Shown here piece after piece: positions 8,024 to 39,123 of a DNA stretch of 64,000 nt. The DNA lies in the IMG/VR virus record IMGVR_UViG_3300017763_000002, positions 62,001 through 126,000 of that record; one strand, given 5' to 3'. A program made the translations under genes and the position numbers. The notes below the pieces were generated by a model. It was not told the DNA's origin. It did not search any database and was given only the letters and a program-made list of their open reading frames with translations. Positions within the stretch are counted from its first letter, which is position 1. The number at the start of each line of letters is the position of its first letter.

Positions 8024-8248
8024 TTAATATGGGCCGCCTAGATTGGAATTTGGATATCTATCTGACCTTGGATTTTTGCTGTTAGTATTATTACCACTAT
8101 TTGAATTAGGGTAATAGTTCGAGTCATTATCGTTGCCGTAATAGCCTCGATCTTGTTTTCTTTTGGATGAATTAAACACTCCTTGGTTGGAGTAGTTTGG
8201 CTTAGTTAAACTTGTAGGGGTTTGGTTGTTTGGGTAATTGATACTCAT
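8024..8248 (-). CDS. Small Asn/Ser/Tyr-rich low-complexity protein
   Basis: 74 aa, about 17 Asn, no hydrophobic core; preceded by GTGTAATA at the conserved spacing. Confidence 0.55.
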   Translation of the reverse strand: MSINYPNNQTPTSLTKPNYSNQGVFNSSKRKQDRGYYGNDNDSNYYPNSNSGNNTNSKNPRSDRYPNSNLGGPY

Positions 8249-8269: not shown

Positions 8270-9283
8270 TTAAAAATCGTCTTCTAAAGAGCCGCTTTGT
8301 TGATATTCTCTGACCCTTCTTTCGAAGAAATTACCCATGGCCTGCACGTCAACAACTTCTCCAAGCCAAGGAAATGGGTTTTTATCACTAGGGAATCTGT
8401 AATCTAAACCGATCGCTTCAAGCCTTCTGTTTCCAATATAATACATATAATCGACAAACATTTCTGCATTTAAACCTAATATTCCTGTTGGTAGAACGTC
8501 GTGTGCATAAGCAATTTCTAGTTCAACAGCCTTTTTAATATGCTCTACAAATTCATCTTGAATTTTTTTAGTCCATATTGTAGGGTTCTGCTCTATTAAG
8601 GTATTAATTAAATATGTACCAAAGGCTATGTGGGAGCTTTCGTCCCTAAGGGTGTACTTGATTTGATCTGAAATGCCTTGTAGTTTGTTTTGCCTGCCTA
8701 ATGCAAGCAACATTGCGAAGCCGCTAAAAAAGAAAGTTCCTTCGCAAACAATCCAGTAGGTAAGAAAGTTTCTTAGTATTTCTTGCTTTCCTTCTTTAGA
8801 GTGTGGGTTAAAATCTTGTCTTCCTATGTCGTTGGTTATAGCCATAAGAAAGTCGTCTTTAGCTTTAATACTTGGAATATTCTCGTAGGCGGTAAACACT
8901 TCATCAATATCTAAATCTAAACTATCACAAACGTATACTACCGTAAGGTTGTGAAGGCTTTCTTCAAATGCTTGACGAAGGATATACTGGCGGCACTCAG
9001 CGTCAGTAATGTATTTAAAGGCACTAAGCAAAAGATTATTACCAACCAAAGACTCGCTTCCAGCAAAAAATCCAAGACAGCGCTTAACAAGTAATTTTTC
9101 ATCTTCTGTAATATCTCCATTTTTCCATTGTTGAATGTCGTTTTGCATGGATATTTCTGTGGGCATCCAATTGTTCGCACAGCTTTTCAGGAAAAGGTCC
9201 CATGCATATTTGTGTTTATGTGGCAGTATTCTATTTACACCTGCAATATTTTCTGTTAAAAGTTCTCCTGTTTTATCGTTCAT
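8270..9283 (-). CDS. nrdB: Ribonucleotide reductase beta subunit with class Ic-like signatures
   Basis: WMPTEISM; metal ligands SESL (E), EESLH, CEGTFF, RDESSH; C-terminal FFERRVREYQ. Val sits at the radical-Tyr position. Confidence 0.93.
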   Translation of the reverse strand: MNDKTGELLTENIAGVNRILPHKHKYAWDLFLKSCANNWMPTEISMQNDIQQWKNGDITEDEKLLVKRCLGFFAGSESLVGNNLLLSAFKYITDAECRQYILRQAFEESLHNLTVVYVCDSLDLDIDEVFTAYENIPSIKAKDDFLMAITNDIGRQDFNPHSKEGKQEILRNFLTYWIVCEGTFFFSGFAMLLALGRQNKLQGISDQIKYTLRDESSHIAFGTYLINTLIEQNPTIWTKKIQDEFVEHIKKAVELEIAYAHDVLPTGILGLNAEMFVDYMYYIGNRRLEAIGLDYRFPSDKNPFPWLGEVVDVQAMGNFFERRVREYQQSGSLEDDF

Positions 9284-9290
9284 GTTTTTT

Positions 9291-9319
9291 ATATTACAGC
9301 ATATAACGAATTAAGTCAA
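9291..9319 (-). promoter_or_regulatory. sigma70-type promoter for nrdB
   Basis: Minus strand TTGACT-17 nt-TAATAT; the -10 ends 8 nt before the ATG. Confidence 0.6.
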
Positions 9320-9327
9320 GAAAAAGT

Positions 9328-9966
9328 TCAATCTTTTTGTTCTGGGCACATCAATTTTATTAAATCATTCTGCTGTGTTTTTGAGGCCTTGTTCCATTGA
9401 AGGGCTATATCTTTTCTTTTTTCTTGTATAGTTTTTTCTTTTTCGCATAATTCTTTTTCTATTTTTTCTAAAAAATCAATAGATATTTCTGAAAGATCAA
9501 TGTCTAGATCAAAAGATATTTCTATTAAATCTTCTATCTTGTTAGTCTCTTTAGCCTCTGTAGCGCTTATGAACATCTCTGTAAGCTCTTCGTCTTTTAA
9601 GTCTGGGTGGGTTACTTTCGCGATCTCTCTATATAAAGACTTGACTTCATCAGCTTCTGAGTCTGTCACTTCTTTTGCTTCTGGTTTATCATGAGCTTTA
9701 TCTGCAACAAGCGGGTTTTTGCAATTAGGGTTATTAGCGCAATATTCTATGATTGATGCAAACATTTTTTGTTTAGCTTCGGAAAGCTCTTCTTCTAGGA
9801 TTTCCATTTCTATACTTAAGTATTTGCTTTTATGCTTTAGTCTTAATAAAAATTTATTTTTTTCTGAATTGTTGGTTTTTTTACGTTTGCGTTTTTTATT
9901 GGAAGATGGTCTGTATTTACCAAGCTCCTCTTTTTCCCATTTTTTAAAAGATTCAAAAAAGTCCAT
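9328..9966 (-). CDS. J-domain (DnaJ-like HPD) protein
   Basis: EVKSLYREIAKVTHPDL...FISATEA is J-domain helix II, the HPD loop and helix III, flanked by helical segments. Confidence 0.7.
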   Translation of the reverse strand: MDFFESFKKWEKEELGKYRPSSNKKRKRKKTNNSEKNKFLLRLKHKSKYLSIEMEILEEELSEAKQKMFASIIEYCANNPNCKNPLVADKAHDKPEAKEVTDSEADEVKSLYREIAKVTHPDLKDEELTEMFISATEAKETNKIEDLIEISFDLDIDLSEISIDFLEKIEKELCEKEKTIQEKRKDIALQWNKASKTQQNDLIKLMCPEQKD

Positions 9967-10033: not shown

Positions 10034-11431
10034 TCAGGAATCATGCCCCTGAGGCTCTACAGATAGAATAATATCCATACTGTATCCAGTACCTGCAATG
10101 TTATCCGAAAAATCGAATATTGCTTGGGTATTGCTAACGCTCCTCAACTGGCAGATCACGATTGGATCTCCAGAAACACTGTTCTTGATTTGCCCCATAA
10201 CCTTTGGAGACTGAGTAGCTGTGAAGCCAAACCCAGTATAATCGCAGGTAATGGACTGCGCTCCGCTAGAGATAGCAAAGTTCGATACGCGAATATTGTT
10301 ATCAATTCTTTGTATCGTTCCTTGGATCGATACTTCGGAGGCACTAATTCTTGTTGTAAGGGAGCCAGTCTTGCTGTCCATTTCAACTTCTTCAGCACTC
10401 AAGCGAGTTGTAAGGGAACCAGCTTTGCTGTCCATTTCAACTTCTTCAGCACTCAAGCGAGTTGTAAGGGAACCAGTCTTGCTGTCCATTTCAACTTCTT
10501 CAGCACTTACGCGAGTTGTAAGGGAAGTTTCAGCGGCACTTACACGAGTTGTAAGAGAGCCAGCTTTGCTGTCCATTTCAACTTCTTCAGCACTCAAGCG
10601 AGTTGTAAGGGAACCAGCTTTGCTGTCCATCTCAACTTCTTCAGCACTCAAGCGAGTTGTAAGAGAACCAGCTTTGCTGTCCATTTCAACTTCTTCAGCA
10701 CTCAAGCGGGTCTCAATAGAATCAACTTGACTACCTTCTGATCCTGTAGCAACTTCGTTAGCACTTAAACGAGTTGTAAGGGAAGCTGTCTTGCTGTCCA
10801 TTTCAACTTCTTCAGCACTTACGCGAGTTGTAAGGGAAGTTTCAGCGGCACTTACACGAGTTGTAAGAGAACCAGCTTTGCTGTCCATTTCAACTTCTTC
10901 AGCACTCAAACGAGTTGTAAGGGAACCAGTCTTGCTGTCCATTTCAACTTCTTCAGCACTTACGCGAGTTGTAAGGGAATCAGCTTTGCTGTCCATTTCA
11001 ACTTCTTCAGCACTTACGCGAGTTGTAAGGGAACCAGCTTTGCTGTCCATTTCAACTTCTTCAGCACTTACGCGAGTTGTAAGGGAATCAGCTTTGCTGT
11101 CCATTTCAACTTCTTCAGCACTTACGCGAGTTGTAAGGGAATCAGCTTTGCTGTCCATTTCAACTTCTTCAGCACTTAATCGGGTCTCAATAGAGTCGAC
11201 GCCGTTATTTTGAATGTCAGAAGCAGTACTTTCTTGAACACTTACTCTGGTTTCCAGAGAAGATGTTAAGGATGTCTGTGCGACTTCTGTAACGCTTTGT
11301 CGAGATTCAAGAGAACCTGTGACGCTTACATCAGCTTGAACTACATTATCAAATACTAGTTTACCACCAGCATTTTTTTCGATTGTTACACTGTCCAGCT
11401 TTATCTTTTCAGCAGCAATAATTTTTGCCAT
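10034..11431 (-). CDS. Fibre-like virion protein with 18-aa coiled-coil repeats and a C-terminal beta domain
   Basis: 13 copies of SLTTR(V/L)SAEEVEMDSK(A/T)x, two 11-aa SLTTRVSAAET units and a C-terminal domain of about 85 aa. Confidence 0.75.
   Translation of the reverse strand: MAKIIAAEKIKLDSVTIEKNAGGKLVFDNVVQADVSVTGSLESRQSVTEVAQTSLTSSLETRVSVQESTASDIQNNGVDSIETRLSAEEVEMDSKADSLTTRVSAEEVEMDSKADSLTTRVSAEEVEMDSKAGSLTTRVSAEEVEMDSKADSLTTRVSAEEVEMDSKTGSLTTRLSAEEVEMDSKAGSLTTRVSAAETSLTTRVSAEEVEMDSKTASLTTRLSANEVATGSEGSQVDSIETRLSAEEVEMDSKAGSLTTRLSAEEVEMDSKAGSLTTRLSAEEVEMDSKAGSLTTRVSAAETSLTTRVSAEEVEMDSKTGSLTTRLSAEEVEMDSKAGSLTTRLSAEEVEMDSKTGSLTTRISASEVSIQGTIQRIDNNIRVSNFAISSGAQSITCDYTGFGFTATQSPKVMGQIKNSVSGDPIVICQLRSVSNTQAIFDFSDNIAGTGYSMDIILSVEPQGHDS
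10345..11197 (-). repeat. 54-bp coding tandem repeat (with 33-bp variant units)
   Basis: Near-identical gctgtccatttcaacttcttcagcact units recur every 54 nt, in frame with the CDS. Confidence 0.95.
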
Positions 11432-11467: not shown

Positions 11468-12601
11468 TTAAATATTCTCAAACAGTTGTGAAGTTTTTTT
11501 AATATTGTCTGGATTGTTCGGGCTGTATTTCCAGCACAACTCTTTTCCTTGTTCTAGTTTTATATCCAAATTATCGTTGTGTTCTTCTGTGGCAAGCTTT
11601 AATTGTTCTGCAGCTTCAATCATATTAAAATCTTCGTAGTAATATCCAAAATCTTTTATAAATTCAGAGTTATGAACTAAAGGGTATCCAAAATGGGCAG
11701 CTTCTAAATACGTATAATTTAATGCATTTAAATGTTGGTGGCTGAGAAAAATGGGGTTATCTTTACTCATAATTTTTGGCATAGCTTCTCGTGGATCGAA
11801 TATCATTCTTTTTATATGGTTTCTGAAAACCCTATCATTTAATATTCTAGATCTTAGTTGATCTTTTTCATCATTGATTAATTTTAATGTGCCAAAGAAT
11901 ATAGCTTTTTCAAAAATATCTGGATAATGTACTAATAAATGTTTAACTGTAAATAATGGAGGTATAAAAGTTTTACTAAAGTTAATATTGGGTTCAACTA
12001 TAGCAATATTATTTTTTTCTTTTATATTGTATTTTAAATCTTTTTCTTGTATATTAAGAACTTGTGCTGAACCATATATAAATTTAGGATCCCATATATA
12101 TGGTAGCTCAAAAGTATTTGGCGAAGTATTTATTTTTAAATAATCTTCACAGAAGTCGTAATGGGGAGAATATAGAACTGCGTCATGAATTAAAGAACTT
12201 GGCTCGGAAGCCCAGCCTCCATGGTTTTCTTCACTGCAAATATAATTACAAATATCTGTAACTAAAACATTTCCATAATTAATGGCAGCAATTTTACATT
12301 CTGAATTCACTGATTTGTATTTTTCTGCATGCTCTGGATTGCATGCTATGCCTGGGGTACAAACGACATCTAAATGGTGCTTTATTGGTGACAATTCATC
12401 GTAAGATATAATGTTTTTATTATTTAAAAAACTTTGTTCAATGTCTGTTTTAATTATAGACTCTTCTTGGTTTCCGCAAAAATCTATAAAAAATACATCG
12501 TGCCCAGCGGATTCAAGTATTTCATAAAGTAGTATTATGTTCTGGTACAACCCGTTAGAAAAAAATCCGTAATTAAATCTAGTAGTTATTCCTATATGCA
12601 T
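11468..12601 (-). CDS. DUF2827-like putative GT-B glycosyltransferase
   Basis: MHIGIT..FFSNGLYQNIILLY; IAIVEPNINFSK; SHQHLNALNYTYLEAAHFGYPLVHNS..GYYY, recognised as the DUF2827 pattern with a GT-B donor-binding-like ExxxxGxP. Confidence 0.65.
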   Translation of the reverse strand: MHIGITTRFNYGFFSNGLYQNIILLYEILESAGHDVFFIDFCGNQEESIIKTDIEQSFLNNKNIISYDELSPIKHHLDVVCTPGIACNPEHAEKYKSVNSECKIAAINYGNVLVTDICNYICSEENHGGWASEPSSLIHDAVLYSPHYDFCEDYLKINTSPNTFELPYIWDPKFIYGSAQVLNIQEKDLKYNIKEKNNIAIVEPNINFSKTFIPPLFTVKHLLVHYPDIFEKAIFFGTLKLINDEKDQLRSRILNDRVFRNHIKRMIFDPREAMPKIMSKDNPIFLSHQHLNALNYTYLEAAHFGYPLVHNSEFIKDFGYYYEDFNMIEAAEQLKLATEEHNDNLDIKLEQGKELCWKYSPNNPDNIKKTSQLFENI

Positions 12602-12680: not shown

Positions 12681-12688
12681 GTGTACAG
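12681..12688 (+). promoter_or_regulatory. GTGTA motif (candidate late promoter)
   Basis: GTGTACAG starting 15 nt before the GTG at 12696. The ORF track uses this GTG as the start codon. Confidence 0.55.
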
Positions 12689-12695
12689 ATATAGC

Positions 12696-14741
12696 GTGAG
12701 CAAAAGAAAATATAATAAAAAGTCTGACTATTGGAAAAAATTCGACAAGCCTAATTCACCAGCAATCCCTATAGTCTCTGAGGATCAAGTGCCTCCTGCT
12801 TTTGCTGGAGAGTCTTATTATTCTGAAACCACAAATGCGTCGGTAATATTGCAGCAATCTAATGCGAACAGAAATGAACCAGGGCAAAGTAGGACAAATA
12901 GAAGGTCTAATACTAAAGCTAAAGCTCAAAAGAAAGATAAGTATGAAAATATAAGAAGCGGGGTATTGCCTTATGATTTTTCTTCTAGCGGAATTTCTAT
13001 AAGAGATTCTGTTGAACTCTGCCAGAAGGCCTACGCTAATATATCAATTTTTAGAAACGCAATAGATATTATGTCTGAGTTCGCCAACTCAAATATACAG
13101 CTTCAAGGCGGCAATCAGAAGTCAAGAGAATTTGTATATAAGTGGTTTGATAAAGTTAATTTATGGAAAATTAGAGACCAATACTTTCGAGAGTATTACA
13201 GGTCTGGGAATATCTTCATGTATAGAGTGGACGGAAAATTCACGCGAGAAGACTTTGCTAAAATGTCTAAGGTTTATGGCGGTTTGGAGCCTGGTAGAAT
13301 ACCAATAAGATACATATTTCTTAACCCTTATGATATTATGGCTCATCGGGCGACAACTTTTAGTGAGGGCCAGTATTTTAAAGTCTTATCTGAATACGAT
13401 TTAGAAAGACTGAAGAGCCCCAAGACAGAATATGATCAGCAGGTATTTGATAGTATGCCTAAGGAAGTAAAAGAAATATTAGATACTAATTCTTTTCCAA
13501 GAGATGGGGTTAAAGTTCCTCTTCCTGATGATAAAATTATTCACTCTTTTTATAAAAAGCAGGATTACGAACCGTTTGCAATACCTTTCGGCTTCCCCGT
13601 GTTAGATGATATAAATTACAAAATAGAACTTAAAAAAATAGATCAGGCTATATGTAGAACTATAGAAAATGTTATATTGCTTATTACTATGGGCGCTGAA
13701 CCTGAAAAAGGGGGGATAAATCCTAGAAATTTAGAAGCCATGCAGAAGCTTTTTCAAAACGAAAGCGTTGGGAGGGTTTTGGTTAGTGACTATACTACTA
13801 AGGCAGATTTTGTTATACCAGATATAAGGAAGGTTGTTGGCCCAGATAAATATCAGATAGTTAATCAAGATATTAGGGAGGGATTACAAAACATTATTGT
13901 TGGAGACGAAAGATATAGTAATACTCAAGTAAAAGCAGAAATCTTTTTAGAAAGATTAAAAGAAGCAAGGAACGCTTTTCTTAATGATTTCTTGCAAGAT
14001 CAAATTAAAATGGTTTGCGAAAATATGGGCTTTAGGCAATACCCTGTAGCTCATTTTGAAGAGATTGATATTAAAGACGAAGTCCAATTACAAAGAGTCG
14101 CCACAAGACTGATTGAATTAGGCATACTTACTCCTGAACAAGGAATTAATGCAATTAAATCTGGAATATATCCTGCGGGGGAAGATTTAGATCTCGCTCA
14201 AGAAGAATTTTTGTCTCAAAGAAAAGAGGGTAAATTTAATCCATTAGTCGGAGGAGTTCCTTCTGTTGAGAATCCAGGGGCAGAAAAAGATAGGGCTCTT
14301 CAGAAAGAAACTATGCAAAAAGCTGCACCTCCTGTCCAACAAAGTGCACCTACAAAAGAAAGCGGTAGGCCTACTGGCACTAATGGAATTCCGCAAGAAA
14401 ATAAATCAACAGAAAAAATTACACCTTCAGATATAAAAGATGTTATATTTAAAATAGAAAATTTAAACAAAGCTGTTAAGTCTCAAGTATTAAAAAAGCA
14501 TTCTGTAAAAAAACTTAATAAAGCACAAAATAAAATGGTAGACGAATTATGCGAATCTATTATATGCTCTTCTAGTCAAAATGAATGGGAAAAAGTTGCG
14601 CAATGCTGTATGGATGATAATAATCAAATCGCTAAGTTACAAGTAATTCCTGAGATACTAGATATAAGTCAAGAGAAGGAGCTGGGTTTGTATCCGTCGG
14701 CTATATTTTATCATAGTATGGGGGAATTTACTGATGATTAA
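12696..14741 (+). CDS. Probable portal protein
   Basis: Size and portal-like pattern (FRNAIDIMSEFAN...QYFREYYRSGNIFMY; PFAIPFGFPVL; helical C-half; GRP tail); first gene of a structural block. Start refined to GTG 12696 (MSKRKY). Confidence 0.6.
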   Translation: MSKRKYNKKSDYWKKFDKPNSPAIPIVSEDQVPPAFAGESYYSETTNASVILQQSNANRNEPGQSRTNRRSNTKAKAQKKDKYENIRSGVLPYDFSSSGISIRDSVELCQKAYANISIFRNAIDIMSEFANSNIQLQGGNQKSREFVYKWFDKVNLWKIRDQYFREYYRSGNIFMYRVDGKFTREDFAKMSKVYGGLEPGRIPIRYIFLNPYDIMAHRATTFSEGQYFKVLSEYDLERLKSPKTEYDQQVFDSMPKEVKEILDTNSFPRDGVKVPLPDDKIIHSFYKKQDYEPFAIPFGFPVLDDINYKIELKKIDQAICRTIENVILLITMGAEPEKGGINPRNLEAMQKLFQNESVGRVLVSDYTTKADFVIPDIRKVVGPDKYQIVNQDIREGLQNIIVGDERYSNTQVKAEIFLERLKEARNAFLNDFLQDQIKMVCENMGFRQYPVAHFEEIDIKDEVQLQRVATRLIELGILTPEQGINAIKSGIYPAGEDLDLAQEEFLSQRKEGKFNPLVGGVPSVENPGAEKDRALQKETMQKAAPPVQQSAPTKESGRPTGTNGIPQENKSTEKITPSDIKDVIFKIENLNKAVKSQVLKKHSVKKLNKAQNKMVDELCESIICSSSQNEWEKVAQCCMDDNNQIAKLQVIPEILDISQEKELGLYPSAIFYHSMGEFTDD

Positions 14742-20379: not shown

Positions 20380-23300
20380 ATGGCTAAGAAGTGCAGGTTT
20401 GGTTTTTTTATAAATCCAGAAAATGGCTACCCTCGTATGACTGACAATACGTTAATCACTAGTTATCAATTAAATAATTATTCTGGGGGTATATTAAATG
20501 GAAAATACACATCTTCTGAAATTACCGCAGTCACAACACTAGATACGCACGGAGCCTCAAATTATTTTTGGAAAGAAAATCAAGAAAGTAATTGGGTTGA
20601 GGAGGGTGACGAAAATACGAATTATTTAATTGGTGGAAATGGTGATAGTGCTGGCTATAATTGGAATCCATCAAGAATTAATCTTTTGGCGCACGCATCA
20701 GATGACGGGTTGCCTGTTGGCGCTGTTAATCCGCAGCCTCAAGTTTATCAATCTACAGGATCTTCATTTTACGGAGCTGAAGGTTCCGGCAAAAGAACAA
20801 TAATTGGAGTTGATTTAAATAAAATTTCCGATGGTTTTTATGCTAATTTTTGGATGAGTTTCGCTAGAAATACTGTAGTTGATAGAAATACATATTCAAT
20901 TAAAGACGTAGTTAAATTTAAGCTTAATGATAAGTATTATTCTGTTCACATAGACATAACTGATAATGAATTAAGGATATTAAATCATACAGATAAATTA
21001 ATTCTATCATCTTCACCTTTTCAGCCTACCGATAATACTTATAATTGGCATAATTTTGATTTGAGAATTAGTTCAACATGTAAAATTGAATGTTCTTATA
21101 AAAATGCATATGTTAGTTGTCAATTATCAAATTTATCTTTTGAGCAAATGCAGGAGTTATATACTTTTCCTGGTGCGGTTCATGCGGCTTCTCATTTAAT
21201 GAGTACAAACTGGTCTGTTAATGATGGATCTGGTAGTGAAGATAATGGGCCAGCGAAACCTTTTATTGCTGTGCCTTATCATTATCATAAAAAAATTGAC
21301 AACATGAGTAATTTTGAATTAGCAAGTTACCCTGGAGCTAAAGCGTGGGCTACGTGGGGTGGCGCTTATGAATATAGAGCTAGAAATGTCGGGGCGGAGG
21401 GTAACAAATATAGATGCCAAGTAAAGGTTAATACTGCTAATACTGAAGATTTTGAATGGTTGATTATCGATCAGGATGGTCAGGTTTTTATAACATTACA
21501 TTGCAAAAATCATCCAAATACTTATACTCGAGCAGAGATAAGAGAATTTTATAATAATACCCCTGGTAACCCTTATACCATGATACCTTATGATGATGAT
21601 AATTGGGCCTATCCAGCTGAAGCAGCTGGTATATCTACTTGGGGGTGGGGTTCATTATCGGGAGGTATAGACGCTGGAATCGATCCTGCGTTATCAATGA
21701 AAACTATTAAGTCTAAAATAGAATCCGAAACAGGAGAAATCAACTTATCTTTATCAAGTTTAGATAAAATGTATTGGGGGCATGCCGACACTTCTATAGT
21801 GATGAGTGATTTTAATAATGTTGAAGCTTTTAATGTAATTGTTAATGGTTTAAAAACTGAAGTGCTAACTTCTGCTAAAATTAATGCGGTTCTTTTTGAT
21901 GATGATTCTAATTCATCAGTATCAGAAGATTTTACTTTTGTAGGATTAAGTGATGTTAGTAATTTATTTTCTATTTATAAGCCGCAAGTAACAAAAAGCA
22001 AATTTAATTCTGGGTTGGCAAAACTTAGATTAAATCTTCATCGAGGCGATCCCTTACTTATATATGATGCTGATGGAGACGGAATAGAAGATTCTCAAGA
22101 TCCAAGCTTTATGGATGCCGATGGAGATGGTGTTGTTGATGAATTGGATGCACTTCCTAATGACCCCAATGAGTCTGTAGATTCTGACGGAGATGGAGTA
22201 GGGGATAATTCAGATTCTCAGCCAAATAACCCAGGAGTTTCTACTCCTCCTGCGCATTTTGTTTATGGAGATGATGGATCTAATGGGATTGGATATTATT
22301 ATCCTGTATATTTAACAACAAATGGTCTTGGGCCTTACCATTCTCATGTAATTAACGGACAAACCGTTTACATGGAAGACGCTAACGCAAATCACGCGCA
22401 AGCAAGTTTATCTGGAAGTTATACAATTTTACCAGGCACAACAGTTCCTGATGCAGACGGAGATGGTGTTCCTGATGATTTAGACGCGTTTCCTAACGAC
22501 GCTTCTTTAAGTGCTAAACAAAATTACTCTTTAACTTGGAACCAATCGTCTGGATCATTGAACACTTCTGCAGGAACTCATGCTTTGGTTGCAACTAACG
22601 AATCAAATAGTGAACCTATCGTTTGGAATATAACCAGTGGAAGCGGTGCCTACGTAGGCGTAGATGGTAATGGTAATCCAGCTTTAATACTAACAGGTAA
22701 TGGTAGCGTATCAGTTTCTCCAAGTATAGCGGGTACTTCAGAATACAATGAGCTAGCCGCAGGTGTTGTAGTTAAAGATTTTCACATATTAGATAATACT
22801 ACGGACACTGATGGAGATGGAGTTGCTGATTTTTATGATTCGTATCCAAATGCGTCTTCTGTTTTAGATAGTGACGGTGATGGATTAACTGATGAAGAAG
22901 AGGCCTCTATAGGCAGTGATCCTAATAATACTGATTCCGACGGAGACGGACTAGATGATTACGAAGAAGAAATGGGTTGGGGAATAGATCCTAATAACCC
23001 AGATACAGACGGTGATGGAATTGGCGATTATGAAGAAGCTACTGGAAATACAGACCCTGGAGACGCTGATACTGATGGAGACGGCGTGCAGGACGGGGTT
23101 GACGCTTTTCCGCTCGACGATAGTGAAGACACTGATACTGACGGAGATGGTACTGGAGACAATGCTGATGGCGCCCCAAATGATCCATCTAGCACTACTG
23201 CTGCAGTATTTGACGAATCATCTATAACTAGCCCAGATTTTGCCGCACTAACTGGGTCCAGAGCGGGCTGGGATTACGAAATTGTAGACCAAGCAGGCGC

Positions 23301-24435
23301 TACCCTTACATGGGACGCTGTTCCTGGCGCAACCGAATACAGTGTCACCTTAAACAGGTACAGTTACAGTGACCAAGCTGGAAATTCTACTATGATAGAT
23401 TCAGTTGTATACGATAAGGATAATGGTTATGTTTCCTACGGAGACTCTAATAACTCTACATATAGTTTTACATTACCTACGGAAACAGAAAGCACTGGCT
23501 ACATCATTAGGGTTAACCCTATAGGAAGTTCTTTTGCGCAAGTTAGGCTAGATGTTGTTTTTGTATTGTCTGCGCCTGTATCTGCAACACCCGCGCAATA
23601 TCAACAAGCAGAATCTTTGCTTCAGGGTAATCAAACAGAACCTTTAATTGTGGCTTTAGAGATAGTTCAATCTGAAAACTTTTTCGGCTCTCCAACAAAT
23701 GGTGTTCAAGCTAAGTTGCTTGATACTAGAAATTTTACTGACGTTTCTTTTAAAATCAATTTCGGAGATACAGGAGGAAGTAACGCCGCGATAACTGGCT
23801 GGGTAAGTGCTGAAGGAGAGGCGTCAGCAGACGGGGATGTGAACCCTTTAAGTGGGAATACAGTAAATCAATTTACTAAGGAGGGCTCATTGTATACATT
23901 TACTCTTCCGTTGAGCGGCAATCATTCTGGGGTTAAAGGGTTCTCGGCGCGTGCTTTTGAAAATGGGGTTACAGTTGGTGATGAGACGAGTAGGAGTGAT
24001 TTTGCTCCTGAATTAAATATAGATTCAATAGGAAATTCTTGGGAAATCTCAGAATACCACCCGAATGAAGTAAGAATAACTAGTTATTATAGTCCGTATT
24101 CTTGGAATTTTGCAAGCAACACTCAAAATGCTAGTGTGTTGTATGGAACTCTTAATGGCTCTAGTGGATATGGTCACTATTATGGTAATCATTTTAATAT
24201 AGCGTTGAGTGTAGAAACCGAATTTAAATTTGTAAACCAAACAAGTACTAATTTTTATGTTTATAGACCTAATGGAAACCATTTGTTTAGCGTAGAAGCT
24301 GGAGGAGAAACACTGATAACTTTAAATCAAGTAAGAGATTATAACGGTAGCGAGAGTGATGGATACGCTTGGTCTAGAGATAGTAATATAATGAGCGGTA
24401 GTACTGGTACCGAAGGCTTTATATACGTAGGTTAA
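20380..24435 (+). CDS. Large modular putative virion protein with TSP3-like repeats
   Basis: 1351 aa; N-half paralogous to 19089..20378; clusters of DxDGDG repeats (DSDGDGLTDEEE..DPNNTD); beta-rich C-terminus. Confidence 0.7.
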   Translation: MAKKCRFGFFINPENGYPRMTDNTLITSYQLNNYSGGILNGKYTSSEITAVTTLDTHGASNYFWKENQESNWVEEGDENTNYLIGGNGDSAGYNWNPSRINLLAHASDDGLPVGAVNPQPQVYQSTGSSFYGAEGSGKRTIIGVDLNKISDGFYANFWMSFARNTVVDRNTYSIKDVVKFKLNDKYYSVHIDITDNELRILNHTDKLILSSSPFQPTDNTYNWHNFDLRISSTCKIECSYKNAYVSCQLSNLSFEQMQELYTFPGAVHAASHLMSTNWSVNDGSGSEDNGPAKPFIAVPYHYHKKIDNMSNFELASYPGAKAWATWGGAYEYRARNVGAEGNKYRCQVKVNTANTEDFEWLIIDQDGQVFITLHCKNHPNTYTRAEIREFYNNTPGNPYTMIPYDDDNWAYPAEAAGISTWGWGSLSGGIDAGIDPALSMKTIKSKIESETGEINLSLSSLDKMYWGHADTSIVMSDFNNVEAFNVIVNGLKTEVLTSAKINAVLFDDDSNSSVSEDFTFVGLSDVSNLFSIYKPQVTKSKFNSGLAKLRLNLHRGDPLLIYDADGDGIEDSQDPSFMDADGDGVVDELDALPNDPNESVDSDGDGVGDNSDSQPNNPGVSTPPAHFVYGDDGSNGIGYYYPVYLTTNGLGPYHSHVINGQTVYMEDANANHAQASLSGSYTILPGTTVPDADGDGVPDDLDAFPNDASLSAKQNYSLTWNQSSGSLNTSAGTHALVATNESNSEPIVWNITSGSGAYVGVDGNGNPALILTGNGSVSVSPSIAGTSEYNELAAGVVVKDFHILDNTTDTDGDGVADFYDSYPNASSVLDSDGDGLTDEEEASIGSDPNNTDSDGDGLDDYEEEMGWGIDPNNPDTDGDGIGDYEEATGNTDPGDADTDGDGVQDGVDAFPLDDSEDTDTDGDGTGDNADGAPNDPSSTTAAVFDESSITSPDFAALTGSRAGWDYEIVDQAGATLTWDAVPGATEYSVTLNRYSYSDQAGNSTMIDSVVYDKDNGYVSYGDSNNSTYSFTLPTETESTGYIIRVNPIGSSFAQVRLDVVFVLSAPVSATPAQYQQAESLLQGNQTEPLIVALEIVQSENFFGSPTNGVQAKLLDTRNFTDVSFKINFGDTGGSNAAITGWVSAEGEASADGDVNPLSGNTVNQFTKEGSLYTFTLPLSGNHSGVKGFSARAFENGVTVGDETSRSDFAPELNIDSIGNSWEISEYHPNEVRITSYYSPYSWNFASNTQNASVLYGTLNGSSGYGHYYGNHFNIALSVETEFKFVNQTSTNFYVYRPNGNHLFSVEAGGETLITLNQVRDYNGSESDGYAWSRDSNIMSGSTGTEGFIYVG

Positions 24436-28605: not shown

Positions 28606-28950
28606 TTAATCTTTGTCCAAGTGGTGTTTTATTCCGTTTCTTTTAGCGGAATATTCTTTGAAGTACTTTTTCCTTAATGGATCATACCCGTATTTATCTT
28701 TTCTTTGCTGACTTAGTTCCGAACTTTTATCTACCATTTCTCCGTAAGTGCCTTTAGTATTACCTGTTTTATTAATAAAAGCAACGTTATCCATTGGGTC
28801 GATATCACTATCAATACTGCAATTAGGATTTAAGAAGACCCTTTTCCATTCAATATCATCTTGGTCTTTAAATGATTTTTCATCATTCATATGAAAGAAA
28901 ATTTCTTGATATTCTTCTTTCTCAGGATGTTTGAATATATATATTGGCAT
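28606..28950 (-). CDS. Small protein with degenerate FmdB-like N-terminus
   Basis: MPIYIFKHPE...EIFFHMND resembles MPxYxYxC zinc-ribbon starts but lacks the Cys pairs. Confidence 0.5.
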   Translation of the reverse strand: MPIYIFKHPEKEEYQEIFFHMNDEKSFKDQDDIEWKRVFLNPNCSIDSDIDPMDNVAFINKTGNTKGTYGEMVDKSSELSQQRKDKYGYDPLRKKYFKEYSAKRNGIKHHLDKD

Positions 28951-30038
28951 TATAATGAATTAATTATGGAATCAACTGTATTAGAATATGTGAATTTATT
29001 TTTTAATTTGGTTCCATTTATATTATATTTGTTTTTACTTATAATATCTAGTGCTTTATCTAGTGCAGAATTAAATTGATCTTTATTGAATGTATACATG
29101 TATCCCTGATTAAACTCTAAGTCTTTGTAAAAAAACTTTTGGTCATATATTTCTATTCTTTCTTTTGGTTCGACTAATACAGAATTATCTTCTGTGGCCC
29201 AGTCTTTATGTGAGGAGCAGTTTAGTACTATGGGTAATTTACCTAAGCAGGTAGAATTGAAGACAGGTAGATTCCAGCCTTCTCCACCACTGAGACCTCC
29301 AAGGTCTATGTCTATAGAGTTGAGATAGTCATTTACTTGAGCATTGGTTTTTAACCAAGGCAGGAAGTTTATATTGTGGTACTGTCTGTTGTTTAATGTA
29401 GATTTTTTGAGCTTTGCAATTTCTTCGTTCTTTAAAAATTTATTTCCTACGCAACAAGTAAGCTGGTACTTTGGGTCATCTCCAAATCTTTCGCTCCACA
29501 TTCTTATTATCTTTTCTGTGTTTTTTCTTTTTTCCCATTTACCCATTAATCCGAAATGTATTTTATCGGACATATATTCTTTCTTGGTTTCAAAAAAGTC
29601 TTCATCAAATCCAAGTGGACTATGATTTGAATTTTCTACACCGGCATCACTAAAGTAATCCTTACTAAAATTACTACTAAAGACGCATCTATCGTAGGTA
29701 TTTAATATGTTAACTTCTTGAGGTGTTGCTTGTCCAGTTTCGTGGAATGTATATAGTATATTGTAGTCAGACATTTTATCTTCTGCTCCATTAATATGCC
29801 ATATATTTAAGAAGGGAGTGTTTTTATTAATTTTATTATATCTATTTTTTATTGCTTCGTTGATATAGGATGATAAATCATTATCTATATTAGAAAAGCT
29901 AGATAAGTCTACTGTGTTTTTTGTAGGAAATAAAGCTAAATTAATATTTTTTCTATATAATTCTCTTATTATATTGTACGATACGTTACCTAGTGATAGG
30001 TTGTTGATCGGAGCTTTTAATATTAAATTATTAATCAA
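28950..30038 (-). CDS. Glycosyltransferase, GT4-like (GT-B)
   Basis: YTFHET; VFSSNFSK; PLGFD; GLMGKWEKRKNT; GGEGWNLPVFNSTCLGK. TTG start overlapping the ssb stop. Confidence 0.75.
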   Translation of the reverse strand: MINNLILKAPINNLSLGNVSYNIIRELYRKNINLALFPTKNTVDLSSFSNIDNDLSSYINEAIKNRYNKINKNTPFLNIWHINGAEDKMSDYNILYTFHETGQATPQEVNILNTYDRCVFSSNFSKDYFSDAGVENSNHSPLGFDEDFFETKKEYMSDKIHFGLMGKWEKRKNTEKIIRMWSERFGDDPKYQLTCCVGNKFLKNEEIAKLKKSTLNNRQYHNINFLPWLKTNAQVNDYLNSIDIDLGGLSGGEGWNLPVFNSTCLGKLPIVLNCSSHKDWATEDNSVLVEPKERIEIYDQKFFYKDLEFNQGYMYTFNKDQFNSALDKALDIISKNKYNINGTKLKNKFTYSNTVDSIINSL

Positions 30039-33247: not shown

Positions 33248-33981
33248 ATCCAAAAATAGCCCTTTTATTTAGTGGCAAACTTGGAGCGTGGGAAGAATGC
33301 TCAATGTCAATAGTAGAAAATATCATATGGCCACTAAGACCAGATGTTTTCGTAACAACTTGGGACGATCAACCATCTTACGATTTCTGTAAATATTACA
33401 ACCCAGTAAAAAGAGAAATACTAAATTTTAAAAACACAATGGACTATCTAGGCCCTACAGATACATTATCCTGTCAACCTAACCCCGGCTTGATACCCAT
33501 GCTTGCTGGCTTCAAGGTTGCAAACACAATGCTTCAGAATCACCGCAAGAAGTATGATTTAGTTATAAGACTACGCCCCGACGTTCAGGTTTTAGATTCT
33601 ATAAAAATTCATGAAAAAAAAGACTGCCTAAAAAACAAACATATAAGACTACCTCTCTTCGAAAGTACAAATATATATAATCATGAAGAAGAGTTAAAAA
33701 AAGAATTTAACTTTAGTTTTGTTTATGAAAAAGCTTCACTACCAGATCAAGTTAATGACCAAATAGCTATAGGACATCCAGATCAAATGAATAAATACCT
33801 AAATTCTCTTTTTAGTGTTGCTACAGTTATAAATGAAATGTGGGATCAGGGTTATCCAGAATACATGATGAAAGTTCCAGAATCTGTACTCACAATGTGC
33901 TTAAAAAAACAACAATGTAAATACAAAAGATTAACTGGATCCTCACAGCAGGGAAATATAAAAACCAAACTAATAAAATGA
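33238..33981 (+). CDS. Putative glycosyltransferase-like protein (KIALxxSG family)
   Basis: KIALLFSGKL; DVFVTTW; KYDLVIRLRPD; NDQIAIG. Start refined to ATG 33238 after AGGAGG. Confidence 0.55.
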   Translation: MDLNPKIALLFSGKLGAWEECSMSIVENIIWPLRPDVFVTTWDDQPSYDFCKYYNPVKREILNFKNTMDYLGPTDTLSCQPNPGLIPMLAGFKVANTMLQNHRKKYDLVIRLRPDVQVLDSIKIHEKKDCLKNKHIRLPLFESTNIYNHEEELKKEFNFSFVYEKASLPDQVNDQIAIGHPDQMNKYLNSLFSVATVINEMWDQGYPEYMMKVPESVLTMCLKKQQCKYKRLTGSSQQGNIKTKLIK

Positions 33982-36687: not shown

Positions 36688-39123
36688 ATGCAAGTAAAAA
36701 AAAGAAACGGACGATTAGAAGATTTTAATGTAGAAAAGATAAACCTGTGCGCAGAAAGAGCCTGCGAAGGAATCGAAGATGTATCGGCAAGTGAAATACT
36801 GCTCGATGCACAATTACAAATATTTAACAAAATTACTACAGCAGAAATAGACCAGGCTTTAATTTTTTCAGCAAGAGATAAAATTTACAAAGAGCCAAAT
36901 TATTCTTACGCAGCAGCAAAACTACTACTCAATTGCTTGTATAAAGAAGTTTTCAAAGAGGGTGCAGACTCAGATATCTTAGGCCTTCAATACAAAAAAA
37001 GCTTCGTACAAAATATTAAATTTTTAGTAAAAAGCCAAAGGCTTAGCAAAGAAATGCTAGACTTTGATTTGAAAATGCTTTCTGAAGCTTTGGTTATATC
37101 TAGAGATAATAATTTTAAATATCTAGGCATTAAAACTTTACATGATAGGTATTTTATTAGAGATGAAAACAAAATAATGGAATCCCCCCAAGGCTTTTGG
37201 ATGAGAGTTGCTATGGGAATTTCTATAAACGAAAAAAATAAAAATGAAAAAGCTATAGAATTTTATAACTTAATGTCACAATTTCTATACACTCCATCAA
37301 CACCCACGCTATTTAATAGTGGCTCAGTAAGATCTCAATTAAGTTCTTGTTACCTTAACACTTTTGACGATAGCATAGATGGTATATTTGATGGGGCTTG
37401 GCAAGAAGCTAGAAAATCAAAGTATGCTGGAGGTCTTGGGTTAGATGTTACTCCATTCAGATCTACTGGATCACACATCAAAGGAACAAATGGAATCTCT
37501 AGCGGTCTAGTCCCTTGGTTAAAAATTTATAATGATTTATTAGTTGCAGTAAACCAAGGAGGAAAAAGACCTGGAGCAGGGTGTGCGTATTTAGAACCTT
37601 GGCACTTAGACTTTGAAGATTTCTTGAATCTAAGAAGAAATACTGGAGACGAAAGACTACGCTGTCACGATATGAATACTGCATCTTGGATACCCGATGA
37701 ATTCATGAGGAGAGTTAAAAACGATGACGTTTGGTATTTCTTCGACCCTAAAGAGTCTGGCCTGCATGATTGTTTTGGTGAAGAGTTTGATAATAAATAT
37801 AATGATCTTTGTGATAAAGCAGAAGATGGTTTAGTTAAAAATTATAGAACAACTACCGCAAAAGAATTGTGGAAAAAAATGCTAAAAGTTTTGTTCGAAA
37901 CCTCCCATCCATGGAATACATTTAAAGACCCTTGTAATATTAGATATACAAATCAACACCAAGGGGTCGTCCATAGCTCAAACTTATGCACAGAAATAAC
38001 GCTTCACACCAAAGCTTCAACTTACGATAAAGGAGAAAAACAAGATACAGGAGAAACTGCAGTCTGCAACCTCGGGTCTATTAATCTAGTAAACCACATC
38101 AGAGAAATGATAAACTCAGAAGGATCTCCCACATTCAGCATTAACTGGACCCAATTTGCCGAGACAACAAAAACAGCAATTAGAATGTTAGATAATGTAA
38201 TAGATTTGAATTTCTATCCCACAAAAGAATCTGAAAAATCCAACATACAACACCGACCAATAGGCTTAGGCATGATGGGTCTTCATGATATACTTCACAT
38301 ACTCAATATACGCATAGACTCTAAAGAGGCCGTAGATTTCAGTGATAAATTATTTGAGTCTTATAGCAGACATGCAATTTCTGCCAGCTGTGACTTAGCT
38401 TCAGAACGCGGAGCGTACAATACTTACTCTGGATCACTCTGGGATCAAAACGTCTTTCCTATTGATAGCTATAACCAATTAATGCAGTATAGAAAAAAAG
38501 ATCAAGTAGAAGAAAATGAAAATGCCTGGGAAGAAGTAAGGAATAATGTTAAAAAATATGGAATGAGAAACTCAAACGTTATGGCAATAGCTCCTACAGC
38601 AACTATTGGCTATATTAACGGAGTAGAGCAAAGCATTGAACCTAACTTCTCAACTCTATTTGTATACGAAAACAAATCTGGAAACTTTTATATAATCAAT
38701 CAATACTTTGTTTCAGATATGAAAAAATTAAATCTGTGGAACCAAGACATGGCTGACTTAGTAAAAAGCGTAGACGGAGACCTTTCAATGTTAAACGGAG
38801 AAATACCTCAAGATATCAAAGATAAATATAAAACAGTTTTTGACAGGGATATGTTCTCCTTAATAGAATCTAATGCAGCAAGACAGAAGTGGATGGATCA
38901 ATCAATTAGCTTTAATTTATACAACAAAGAAACTTCTTTAAAATACCTTAATGATATATATATGGAATGCTGGGAAAAAGGACTTAAGACAACTTATTAC
39001 TTAAGAAATAGAGCAGCCACAAAAGTAGAAAAATCTACAGAAGAATCCAAGAAAGAAGAAAAGATTGAATCTTGCAGCATAGAAGCTATGAAAAATGGTG
39101 AAGCTTGCGAAAGCTGTCAATAA
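36688..39123 (+). CDS. nrdA: Ribonucleotide reductase class I alpha subunit with ATP cone
   Basis: ATP cone VKKRNGRLE; PSTPTLFN; SSCY; SNLCTEI; VCNLGS; APTATI; TTYYLR; C-terminal CESC. Confidence 0.95.
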   Translation: MQVKKRNGRLEDFNVEKINLCAERACEGIEDVSASEILLDAQLQIFNKITTAEIDQALIFSARDKIYKEPNYSYAAAKLLLNCLYKEVFKEGADSDILGLQYKKSFVQNIKFLVKSQRLSKEMLDFDLKMLSEALVISRDNNFKYLGIKTLHDRYFIRDENKIMESPQGFWMRVAMGISINEKNKNEKAIEFYNLMSQFLYTPSTPTLFNSGSVRSQLSSCYLNTFDDSIDGIFDGAWQEARKSKYAGGLGLDVTPFRSTGSHIKGTNGISSGLVPWLKIYNDLLVAVNQGGKRPGAGCAYLEPWHLDFEDFLNLRRNTGDERLRCHDMNTASWIPDEFMRRVKNDDVWYFFDPKESGLHDCFGEEFDNKYNDLCDKAEDGLVKNYRTTTAKELWKKMLKVLFETSHPWNTFKDPCNIRYTNQHQGVVHSSNLCTEITLHTKASTYDKGEKQDTGETAVCNLGSINLVNHIREMINSEGSPTFSINWTQFAETTKTAIRMLDNVIDLNFYPTKESEKSNIQHRPIGLGMMGLHDILHILNIRIDSKEAVDFSDKLFESYSRHAISASCDLASERGAYNTYSGSLWDQNVFPIDSYNQLMQYRKKDQVEENENAWEEVRNNVKKYGMRNSNVMAIAPTATIGYINGVEQSIEPNFSTLFVYENKSGNFYIINQYFVSDMKKLNLWNQDMADLVKSVDGDLSMLNGEIPQDIKDKYKTVFDRDMFSLIESNAARQKWMDQSISFNLYNKETSLKYLNDIYMECWEKGLKTTYYLRNRAATKVEKSTEESKKEEKIESCSIEAMKNGEACESCQ

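What the first reader, a model, noticed from the sequence alone, without database searches (positions are those of the whole stretch)
8270..9283. Phage NrdB with class Ic signatures: Val replaces the radical tyrosine
Seen in sequence: after the ExxH ligand the protein reads HNLTVVY, with Val (codon 8941-8939) at H+4, where E. coli has radical Tyr122. The first metal ligand is Glu (FFAGSESLVGNN, codon 9055-9053) rather than Asp84. Established: Chlamydia trachomatis class Ic R2 has Phe127 and Glu89 at these positions and uses a Mn(IV)/Fe(III) cofactor instead of a tyrosyl radical. The C-terminal relay Tyr (VREYQ) is kept. Inference: a Tyr-radical-free Mn/Fe RNR in a phage, possibly sparing iron or resisting radical scavengers, and suggestive of a PVC-type donor or host.
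Basis: partly seen in the sequence, partly recalled or inferred. Interest (0 to 1): 0.75.

Follow-up and report, generated by a model that had tools for sequence, protein, structure and literature searches.

The report
Tyrosine-less class Ic-like phage NrdB
A 205-kb marine phage carries a ribonucleotide reductase small subunit of the Chlamydia (class Ic) type with valine where the radical tyrosine normally sits; this is real, but Val/Ile variants were already noted in databases and in a 2026 preprint on ocean viruses, and their metal cofactor is still untested.

Summary
The ORF at 8270-9283 (-) encodes a 337-aa NrdB. It aligns without gaps to C. trachomatis R2c across the first metal-binding helix. 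V115 matches Ct F127 (E. coli Y122) and E77 matches Ct E89 (E. coli D84). All six metal ligands, W39, Y210 and the C-terminal Y327 are kept. The Tyr at H+6 is also present in Ct R2c and is not the radical site.

The gene is under strong purifying selection. It is the only nrdB in a complete 204.9-kb viral genome, which also has one intact nrdA of the P. aeruginosa/Chlamydia type, 27 kb away.

It belongs to a well-supported clade in which the site is always Val or Ile. Every member whose genomic context I could inspect lies on phage-like DNA. The most likely function is a class Ic-type, tyrosyl-radical-free beta subunit with a metal-centred oxidant, probably Mn/Fe. The metal is inferred, not shown.

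Novelty is limited. The RNRdb rule already counts Val as class Ic, Val/Ile/Leu substitutions were documented earlier, and a 2026 preprint describes a marine viral "subclass Ic-like" Ile/Val clade.

A PVC donor is neither supported nor excluded, and a PVC host has no support.

My addition is a remodelled pocket: Thr replaces the conserved Ile (E. coli I234) wherever the site is aliphatic.

The parts
8270..9283 (-). nrdB: class I RNR beta subunit, 337 aa, of the class Ic-like Val/Ile type
   Evidence: PF00268 at 255.7 bits. NCBIfam NF005550 at 443.5 bits, above the cut-off of 309. Ct R2c at 380 bits. AF2 model with pLDDT 82 matches Ct NrdB at TM 0.86-0.88, rmsd 1.9 A. dN/dS is about 0.03 among relatives.
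8939..8941 (-). V115 (GTA), at the position of E. coli Y122 and Ct F127
   Evidence: Val in 70 and Ile in 10 of 80 IMG/VR relatives.
9053..9055 (-). E77, first metal ligand (Ct E89; Asp84 in E. coli)
   Evidence: In the family, Glu goes with F/V/I/L (and a few Tyr-bearing proteins), while Asp goes only with Tyr.
8630..8962 (-). Span holding the remaining metal ligands E108, H111, E181, E215, H218, plus pocket residues F185 and F189 and relay Y210 (Ct Y222)
   Evidence: All are invariant in the clade except Y210, which is Tyr in 24 of 25 members.
8651..8653 (-). T211, replacing the conserved Ile (E. coli I234, Ct I223) of the F208/F212/I234 pocket
   Evidence: pocket described in PMC5623701.
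8744..8746 (-). C180, immediately before ligand E181; clade-specific (23 of 25, against M/L/F elsewhere)
8948..8950 (-). N112, immediately after ligand H111; invariant in the Val/Ile clade (25 of 25, against T/S elsewhere)
8303..8305 (-). Y327, the C-terminal radical-transfer Tyr (Ct Y338, E. coli Y356), followed by the clade-specific acidic tail ending DDF
9291..9319 (-). Sigma-70-like hexamer pair TTGACT-17-TAATAT, ending 7 nt before the nrdB ATG
   Evidence: This is a consensus match only, and such sites are not enriched in the region.
36688..39123 (+). nrdA: the only RNR alpha subunit in the genome, 811 aa, with one ATP-cone, the catalytic NLCTE motif, the YY pair and a C-terminal Cys pair
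   Evidence: Best PDB hit is P. aeruginosa NrdA 5IM3 at 777.5 bits.

Best explanation
The gene encodes the radical-generating beta subunit of a functional phage class I ribonucleotide reductase of the class Ic kind. It has no oxidisable tyrosine next to metal site 1. The one-electron oxidant must therefore be stored on the dimetal cluster, most probably Mn(IV)/Fe(III) as in C. trachomatis. From there it would pass through the conserved relay (W39 and the C-terminal Y327) to the phage NrdA (window 36688-39123), whose YY pair and catalytic Cys are intact.

Shown here: homology, ligand set, site residue, conservation, purifying selection, and a single alpha/beta pair in a complete genome.

Inferred: metal identity, the metal-centred oxidant, and pairing with the distant nrdA.

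Wherever an aliphatic residue (V/I/L) sits at the site, a Thr replaces the pocket Ile. This suggests a tuned, more polar pocket around site 1 rather than a passive plug.
For: - Closest solved proteins by sequence and by fold are Ct R2c structures, including the Mn/Fe-loaded forms 4D8F and 4D8G.
- NCBIfam equivalog NF005550 scores above its cut-off.
- All six ligands, with Glu first, plus W39, Y210 and Y327 are conserved.
- Across the family, an Asp first ligand goes only with Tyr and never with F/V/I/L; Glu goes with F/V/I/L and with a few Tyr-bearing proteins.
- The Val/Ile clade has 99/99 support and sits with Glu/Phe proteins at 92/92.
- 486 IMG/VR contigs encode relatives. The 80 best have V (70) or I (10) at the site and E at the first ligand.
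- dN/dS is about 0.03.
- The CheckV-complete 204.9-kb genome has one nrdB and one nrdA.
- NrdA has the catalytic and relay residues and a C-terminal Cys pair.
- The RNRdb rule classifies NrdBz proteins with Phe, Leu or Val at this site as subclass Ic (PMC6370689).
Against: - No Val- or Ile-type protein has been characterised biochemically, so metal content cannot be read from sequence (PMC12918982 says the same).
- Authors of that preprint kept the Ile/Val clade apart from true Ic because reference Ic proteins have Phe or Leu.
- The pocket differs from Ct R2c at N112, C180 and T211, which could change metal selectivity or redox tuning.
- nrdA and nrdB are 27 kb apart on opposite strands, and the complex prediction gave no answer.
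- No phage thioredoxin or glutaredoxin was found, so the reductant must come from the host.
Confidence: 0.7

Rival explanations
1. The scaffold is the same and still lacks a radical tyrosine, but the metal make-up differs. It could be a Mn2 high-valent oxidant, as in class Id, or an Fe2 cluster, made possible by the remodelled N112/C180/T211 pocket. That would be a distinct subclass rather than true Ic.
For: Clade-specific second-sphere changes next to ligands H111 and E181 and in the F208/F212/I234-equivalent pocket. The preprint found no clear single-metal biogeography and left the cofactor open. Mismetallation of the Ic scaffold is known (PMC8463856).
Against: The first-sphere ligands are identical to Ct R2c, including the Glu first ligand that goes with class Ic, and identity to Ct R2c is 52%. 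Class Id proteins are far more distant: about 20% identity, Foldseek E around 1e-11 against 1e-23 for Ct.
Confidence: 0.17
2. A different residue carries a stable radical, for example the H+6 Tyr (Y117), Y210 or C180. The enzyme would then be a disguised radical-bearing class Ia/Ib-like protein.
For: Y117 and Y210 are mostly conserved, and C180 is clade-specific and adjacent to a ligand.
Against: Y117 aligns with Ct Y129, which is not a radical site, and is T/D/V in 6 of 25 clade members. Y210 equals Ct Y222, which as I recall acts as an electron relay in cofactor assembly; it is Leu in one clade member. C180 is Thr in two members.
Confidence: 0.05
3. The protein is a catalytically dead or purely structural beta-like subunit, as with yeast Rnr4 or apicomplexan R2_e2, or it is an R2lox-type oxidase rather than an RNR subunit.
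For: It lacks the radical Tyr. Weak NCBIfam hits to R2lox models exist.
Against: It is the only beta in a complete genome that keeps an intact alpha. All ligands and the C-terminal Tyr and tail are conserved under strong purifying selection. R2lox models score 35-74 bits, far below their cut-offs of 194-346. R2lox lacks the C-terminal Tyr (PMC3824934).
Confidence: 0.03
4. The gene was acquired from, or the phage infects, a PVC bacterium (Chlamydiae or Planctomycetes).
For: PVC R2c proteins are the most similar Phe-type proteins: Ct 52% and planctomycetes 47-50%, against 37-46% for other Phe types. Planctomycete proteins share Ct's FLY motif. The AU test does not reject a Val/Ile + planctomycete clade (p 0.23).
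Against: The best tree places five Phe-type metagenomic proteins nearest at 92/92 (the one whose contig was inspected, P0129, is phage-like), with the planctomycete clade in an unresolved polytomy. Class Ic-type proteins also occur in Bradyrhizobium and Tardiphaga. The genome is 36% G+C and carries a one-piece tmRNA. MAG bins that hold relatives are taxonomically inconsistent. Chlamydial sequences themselves could not be put in the tree.
Confidence: 0.12

Closest known systems
Chlamydia trachomatis class Ic RNR beta (R2c / NrdB; PDB 1SYY, 4D8F, 4M1I)
   Same: 52% identity with a near-ungapped alignment. Same six ligands, including the Glu first ligand. Same W, relay Tyr (Y222 equivalent) and C-terminal Tyr. 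No oxidisable residue at the radical site. Model matches at TM 0.86-0.88.
   Different: Val instead of Phe127, Thr instead of Ile223, Cys instead of Met192 and Asn instead of Thr124. The tail ends DDF. It is phage-encoded. Its NrdA has one ATP-cone and is 811 aa. The cofactor is not determined.
Marine viral 'subclass Ic-like' RNR clade of GOV 2.0 (PMC12918982, 2026 preprint)
   Same: Marine viral contigs, with alpha nearest to NrdAz and beta carrying Ile or Val at the Tyr site, biochemically uncharacterised. The window's relatives also come from Tara/marine assemblies and are Val/Ile. This is very probably the same clade.
   Different: Sequence-level identity with their set was not checked. 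The preprint does not mention the pocket co-variation or the 200-kb genome context in the text I read.
RNRdb NrdBzc (subclass Ic by the Phe/Leu/Val rule) and NrdBza (P. aeruginosa-type class Ia)
   Same: Same NrdBz sequence neighbourhood. Ic-like and Ia-like proteins are intermixed in the tree and in the published SSN cluster 2. NrdA's best solved hit is P. aeruginosa NrdA.
   Different: NrdBza proteins, including those of cultured Pseudomonas phages such as vB_PpuM-Peetri, have Asp plus Tyr.
Class O (Cyano SP, P-SSP7) phage ferritin-like subunits
   Same: Phage-encoded, with Phe or Leu instead of the radical Tyr (PMC9531940; PMC6370689).
   Different: A different, minimal lineage with a different ligand pattern. 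The window protein is an orthodox full-length NrdBz relative.
R2lox (R2-like ligand-binding oxidase)
   Same: Ferritin-like Mn/Fe scaffold without a radical Tyr.
   Different: R2lox lacks the C-terminal Tyr and is not an RNR subunit. NCBIfam R2lox models are far below cut-off here.

Membership tests
Class Ic RNR beta (R2c / NrdBzc) | Ferritin-like R2 fold and Ribonuc_red_sm domain | tested here: met
   PF00268 at 255.7 bits. AF2 model matches Ct NrdB at TM 0.86-0.88.
Class Ic RNR beta (R2c / NrdBzc) | Ligand set E + ExxH + E + ExxH, with Glu rather than Asp as first ligand | tested here: met
   E77, E108, H111, E181, E215 and H218.
Class Ic RNR beta (R2c / NrdBzc) | Redox-inert residue at the radical-Tyr position (Phe, Leu or Val by the RNRdb rule) | tested here: met
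   V115 aligns with Ct F127 and E. coli Y122. Rule quoted in PMC6370689. Note that PMC12918982 treats Ile/Val as atypical.
Class Ic RNR beta (R2c / NrdBzc) | Retained radical-transfer residues: W (Ct W51) and C-terminal Tyr (Ct Y338) | tested here: met
   W39 and Y327 are invariant in the clade.
Class Ic RNR beta (R2c / NrdBzc) | Phylogenetic placement with characterised R2c | tested here: inconclusive
   Best sequence and fold hits are Ct R2c.
Class Ic RNR beta (R2c / NrdBzc) | Mn(IV)/Fe(III) cofactor that initiates catalysis | not testable with these tools
   Needs metal analysis, EPR/Moessbauer and an activity assay.
Class Ic RNR beta (R2c / NrdBzc) | Cognate class I alpha of the NrdAz type with intact catalytic and relay residues | tested here: met
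   NrdA at 36688-39123. 5IM3 hit at 777.5 bits. NLCTE, YY and a C-terminal Cys pair are present. Physical pairing is not shown (one search gave no answer).
Class Ia/Ib RNR beta | Tyr at the radical site (E. coli Y122) | tested here: not met
   Val is at that position. Y117 at H+6 is not equivalent to Y122.
Class Ie RNR beta | Loss of carboxylate ligands (metal-free, DOPA radical) | tested here: not met
   All carboxylate ligands are present.
R2lox | Family profile match, and absence of the C-terminal relay Tyr | tested here: not met
   NCBIfam R2lox models score 35-74 bits against cut-offs of 194-346. Y327 is present.

The most novel reading that the evidence does not exclude
The aliphatic-site proteins (Val/Ile in phages, Leu in a separate lineage) form a biochemically distinct class I subclass. 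Loss of the aromatic ring together with the Ile-to-Thr change, and in the phage clade also Asn112 and Cys180, would create a polar, probably hydrated pocket at site 1. That pocket would change metal selection, oxidant stability or the first proton-coupled step, rather than simply copying Chlamydia's Mn/Fe chemistry.
Probability: 0.15. Interest if true: 0.65.

Novelty: new member of a known kind. Interest (0 to 1): 0.35.

Why it matters
RNR type sets which trace metals a lytic phage needs to make DNA. A widespread group of roughly 200-kb ocean phages using a tyrosyl-free, possibly Mn/Fe enzyme would bear on iron economy in the sea. The 2026 preprint reports that its Ic-like group is anti-correlated with predicted iron. 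For RNR enzymology, no Val/Ile-type protein has been characterised. The coupled 115/211 change gives a concrete pair of positions to mutate, to learn what the residue at the old radical site does in a metal-centred oxidant.

Tried and rejected
- Complex prediction of NrdA with the NrdB C-terminal 53 residues gave a score of 0.02. The tool's verdict was 'no answer', so it is not evidence either way.
- My first column mapping of the representative set was wrong because all columns were treated as match states. I redid it with hmmalign and RF columns.
- I could not bring chlamydial R2c sequences into the tree. They were only visible as printed alignments, the single genome-contig scan returned only close phage-like relatives, and I did not retype them. 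Planctomycete proteins with the same FLY motif stood in for the PVC group.
- The Hogbom 2010 paper is not held, so its content is cited second-hand from PMC3824934.
- Cluster look-ups gave no organism names for any Val/Ile or Leu representative.
- The test of 115/211 coupling by independent contrasts found only 1-2 independent events, too few for statistics.
- PHROGs gave nothing for the portal and neighbouring structural ORFs, and no close cultured phage was found.
- The idea that the H+6 Tyr is the radical site was rejected.
- The R2lox, class Ie and dead-subunit readings were rejected.

Full report
**What is there**

The ORF at window 8270-9283 (minus strand) is intact and 337 aa long. It is a ribonucleotide reductase small subunit. 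Pfam PF00268 scores 255.7 bits. The NCBIfam equivalog NF005550 scores 443.5 bits against a cut-off of 309.

8941-8939 is GTA, giving V115. 9055-9053 is GAG, giving E77.

**Placement of the residues**

The best solved relatives are the C. trachomatis class Ic beta structures 1SYY, 2ANI and 4D8F (380 bits, E about 1e-112), followed by 6Y2N at 354 bits. Nothing else exceeds 127 bits.

The alignment to Ct R2c runs from residue 7 to 333 and has no gap before residue 296. This gives a direct mapping:

| Window protein | Ct R2c | E. coli NrdB | Role |
|---|---|---|---|
| E77 | E89 | D84 | first metal ligand |
| E108 / H111 | E120 / H123 | E115 / H118 | ligands |
| V115 | F127 | Y122 | radical-Tyr site |
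| Y117 | Y129 | not Tyr (His by my reading of the alignment) | H+6 position |
| E181 | E193 | E204 | ligand |
| F185 / F189 | F197 / F201 | F208 / F212 | pocket |
| Y210 | Y222 | L233 | relay Tyr in Ct |
| T211 | I223 | I234 | pocket |
| E215 / H218 | E227 / H230 | E238 / H241 | ligands |
| Y327 | Y338 | Y356 | C-terminal relay Tyr |

The E. coli column comes from aligning the MG1655 protein fetched. D84 and Y356 are assigned by motif, not by that alignment.

This fails. Ct R2c has the same Tyr at that position, and six of 25 clade members have T, D or V there.

An AlphaFold2 model (mean pLDDT 82, with the C-terminal tail disordered as expected) matches Ct NrdB best, including its Mn/Fe-loaded forms. 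The match is TM 0.86-0.88, rmsd 1.9 A and 52% identity. Chlamydial entries also top Swiss-Prot.

**Is it a working gene in a working system?**

- The window is bases 62001-126000 of a 204,906-bp IMG/VR virus record that CheckV rates as complete.
- The record has one nrdB and one nrdA.
- nrdA lies at window 36688-39123 on the plus strand and encodes 811 aa. It has one ATP-cone, the NLCTE catalytic motif, the TTYYLR Tyr pair and a C-terminal Cys pair.
- Its best solved hit is P. aeruginosa NrdA (5IM3, 777.5 bits), the NrdAz type that also includes Chlamydia.
- The two genes are 27 kb apart on opposite strands, which is unusual.
- Among 76 close nrdB alleles, dN/dS is about 0.03, although dS is saturated.
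- No thioredoxin or glutaredoxin was found in the genome, so the reductant must be the host's.
- A complex prediction of NrdA with the NrdB tail gave no answer.

**How general is Val?**

- The 120 nearest database proteins (80-94% identity, many from Tara and other marine assemblies, on contigs up to 222 kb) read V or I at the site and E at the first ligand.
- IMG/VR holds 486 contigs with a relative. The 80 best have V (70) or I (10), through codons GTA/GTT/GTG and ATA/ATT.
- In 150 representatives at 50% identity, an Asp first ligand goes only with Tyr. Glu goes with F, V, I or L, and in a few proteins with Tyr.

A maximum-likelihood tree was built from 90 rows under LG+C20, with the two trait columns left out.

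- It gives a Val/Ile clade of 25 rows with 99/99 support.
- That clade sits with five Glu/Phe proteins at 92/92.
- A planctomycete Glu/Phe clade, which carries Ct's FLY motif, is separate at 99/95 in an unresolved polytomy.
- The Bradyrhizobium/Tardiphaga Glu/Phe proteins sit inside the Asp/Tyr Pseudomonas/Acinetobacter group.
- This intermixing agrees with the published sequence similarity network, where Ic-like and Ia-like proteins share a cluster (PMC8463856).

Contexts inspected for clade members and neighbours are phage-like:

- P0129 (Phe type, with an intein) lies on a 176-kb contig with PhoH, RecA and DnaB.
- P0271 (Ile type) lies next to an intein-bearing terminase, ThyA and DHFR.
- P0273 lies next to MazG.

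Cultured phages in GenBank only offer Asp/Tyr relatives at 44% identity or less, such as the Pseudomonas phage vB_PpuM-Peetri group.

**A new detail: the pocket is remodelled**

Compared with the Phe and Tyr types, the Val/Ile clade has clade-specific changes:

| Position | Val/Ile clade | Phe and Tyr types |
|---|---|---|
| 112 (just after ligand H111) | Asn, 25 of 25 | T/S |
| 180 (just before ligand E181) | Cys, 23 of 25 | M/L/F |
| 211 | Thr, 23 of 25 (otherwise S or N) | almost always Ile |

Position 211 is E. coli I234. Together with F208 and F212, it forms the conserved hydrophobic pocket between the metal cluster and Tyr122 (PMC5623701).

Across all representatives with intact ligands the coupling is complete. 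F or Y at 115 goes with I/V/L at 211, with a single Q exception. V, I or L at 115 goes with T/S/N.

The Leu-type proteins form a separate lineage. One lies on an 803-kb contig with toxin-antitoxin genes and is probably cellular. So the coupling arose at most twice, which is too few events for a statistical test.

I could not measure distances, because model coordinates are not exposed. That these residues contact each other therefore rests on the E. coli pocket literature and on helix register.

**Mechanism**

The best-supported reading is a class Ic-type beta2 subunit. O2, or H2O2, oxidises a Mn(II)/Fe(II) site to a stable high-valent cluster. That cluster replaces the tyrosyl radical as the oxidant and is reduced reversibly through Y327 to NrdA during turnover.

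The scaffold, ligands and relay are shown here. The metal identity and the metal-centred oxidant are inferred from homology and from the RNRdb rule. I put this at about 0.7.

The main rival is the same radical-free scaffold with another metal combination or altered tuning, at about 0.17. Readings with a radical on another residue, a dead subunit or an R2lox-type oxidase are unlikely.

**What is already known**

- PMC6370689 quotes the RNRdb rule that NrdBz proteins with Phe, Leu or Val at the Tyr site are subclass Ic.
- PMC3824934 states that Leu, Ile and Val substitutions were documented in R2c, citing Hogbom 2010.
- PMC12918982 (bioRxiv, February 2026) reports a novel marine viral clade of 269 alpha sequences, 1.4% of GOV 2.0 viral RNRs, nearest to NrdAz.
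- Its beta subunits have Ile or Val at the Tyr site. The authors call it 'subclass Ic-like' and note that it is uncharacterised.
- They report that it is anti-correlated with predicted iron and peaks at the deep chlorophyll maximum.
- The window's gene fits that description in every respect I could check.
- Phage RNRs without a radical Tyr are also known from the unrelated class O lineage (PMC9531940).

Iron sparing is plausible, and the preprint's iron anti-correlation is weakly in line with it. The same authors say, however, that no single-metal pattern explains the group.

Resistance to radical scavengers is doubtful, because hydroxyurea inactivates class Ic RNR by two routes (PMC8463856).

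A PVC donor is open:

- PVC proteins are the most identical Phe-type relatives at 47-52%.
- The AU test does not reject sisterhood (p 0.23).
- The best tree nevertheless prefers other Phe-type proteins of unnamed metagenomic contigs.

A PVC host has no support. The genome is 36% G+C, and relatives are binned into inconsistent taxa.

**Verdict**

The class Ic reading is supported at the sequence and fold level. The PVC and scavenger ideas are not. This is a new member of an already noticed kind. What remains of interest is that no Val/Ile-type enzyme has been studied, together with the coupled Thr211 change.

Noticed in passing
G000:C1:169776-170138 (outside the window; locus L099 377-739): The phage genome carries a full-length one-piece tmRNA gene (Rfam RF00023, 139.8 bits; ARAGORN tag peptide AKNIVSFEDFVHSEELALAA) and a tRNA-Thr(TGT) at 179633-179708. 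The window itself has no tRNA.
   Followed up: partly
window 8270-9283 (-) versus 36688-39123 (+): nrdB and nrdA are 27 kb apart on opposite strands, although class I alpha and beta genes usually lie side by side in viral genomes. Related phage contigs (L013, L094) keep them close or within a few kb.
   Followed up: partly
window 10034-11431 (-): A 465-aa ORF built largely of 18-aa (54-nt) tandem repeats of the type SLTTRVSAEEVEMDSKA (TRF arrays at 10353-11178, up to 95% matches). It is followed by a strong intrinsic-terminator-like hairpin at 10004-9987. Possibly a fibre or decoration protein.
   Followed up: partly
window 43540-53796, 53798-58696, 60077-63967 (-) and 20380-24435 (+): Very large ORFs of 3418, 1632, 1296 and 1351 aa. 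A minor-tail-protein-like ORF (phrog_18) lies between two of them at 59046-60077. Their functions were not examined.
   Followed up: no
window 9291-9319 (-): A TTGACT-17-TAATAT hexamer pair ends 7 nt before the nrdB ATG, and there is no Shine-Dalgarno-like sequence (the intervening bases are AAAAAAC). This would give a leaderless or near-leaderless transcript. It is a consensus match only.
   Followed up: partly
window 8024-8248 (-) and 9328-9966 (-): nrdB is flanked by a 74-aa Asn/Ser/Tyr/Pro-rich low-complexity ORF downstream and by a 212-aa ORF with a weak DnaJ J-domain match (E 3e-4, below the Pfam cut-off) upstream.
   Followed up: no
window 11468-12601 (-), 28950-30038 (-), 33978-35363 (+), 39706-42809 (+): Several sugar-modification genes lie around the RNR genes: DUF2827 (179.5 bits), glycosyltransferases (GT1, GT9, phrog_2170) and a HAD-phosphatase/nucleotidyltransferase fusion. 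This suggests phage-encoded glycan or DNA/virion modification.
   Followed up: no
P0122, P0123, P0128, P0129, P0131, P0134, P0137, P0146; L094: Many NrdB relatives of this group are 610-690 aa because of an insertion that splits the match in two, consistent with inteins. In L094, NrdA and the terminase carry intein and LAGLIDADG domains. The window's own nrdA and nrdB are intein-free.
   Followed up: partly
window 12681-14741 (+): The portal-like protein has only remote matches (21% identity to Bacillus phage Stahl portal), and the neighbouring large ORFs have no PHROG hit. The phage lineage has no close cultured relative.
   Followed up: partly
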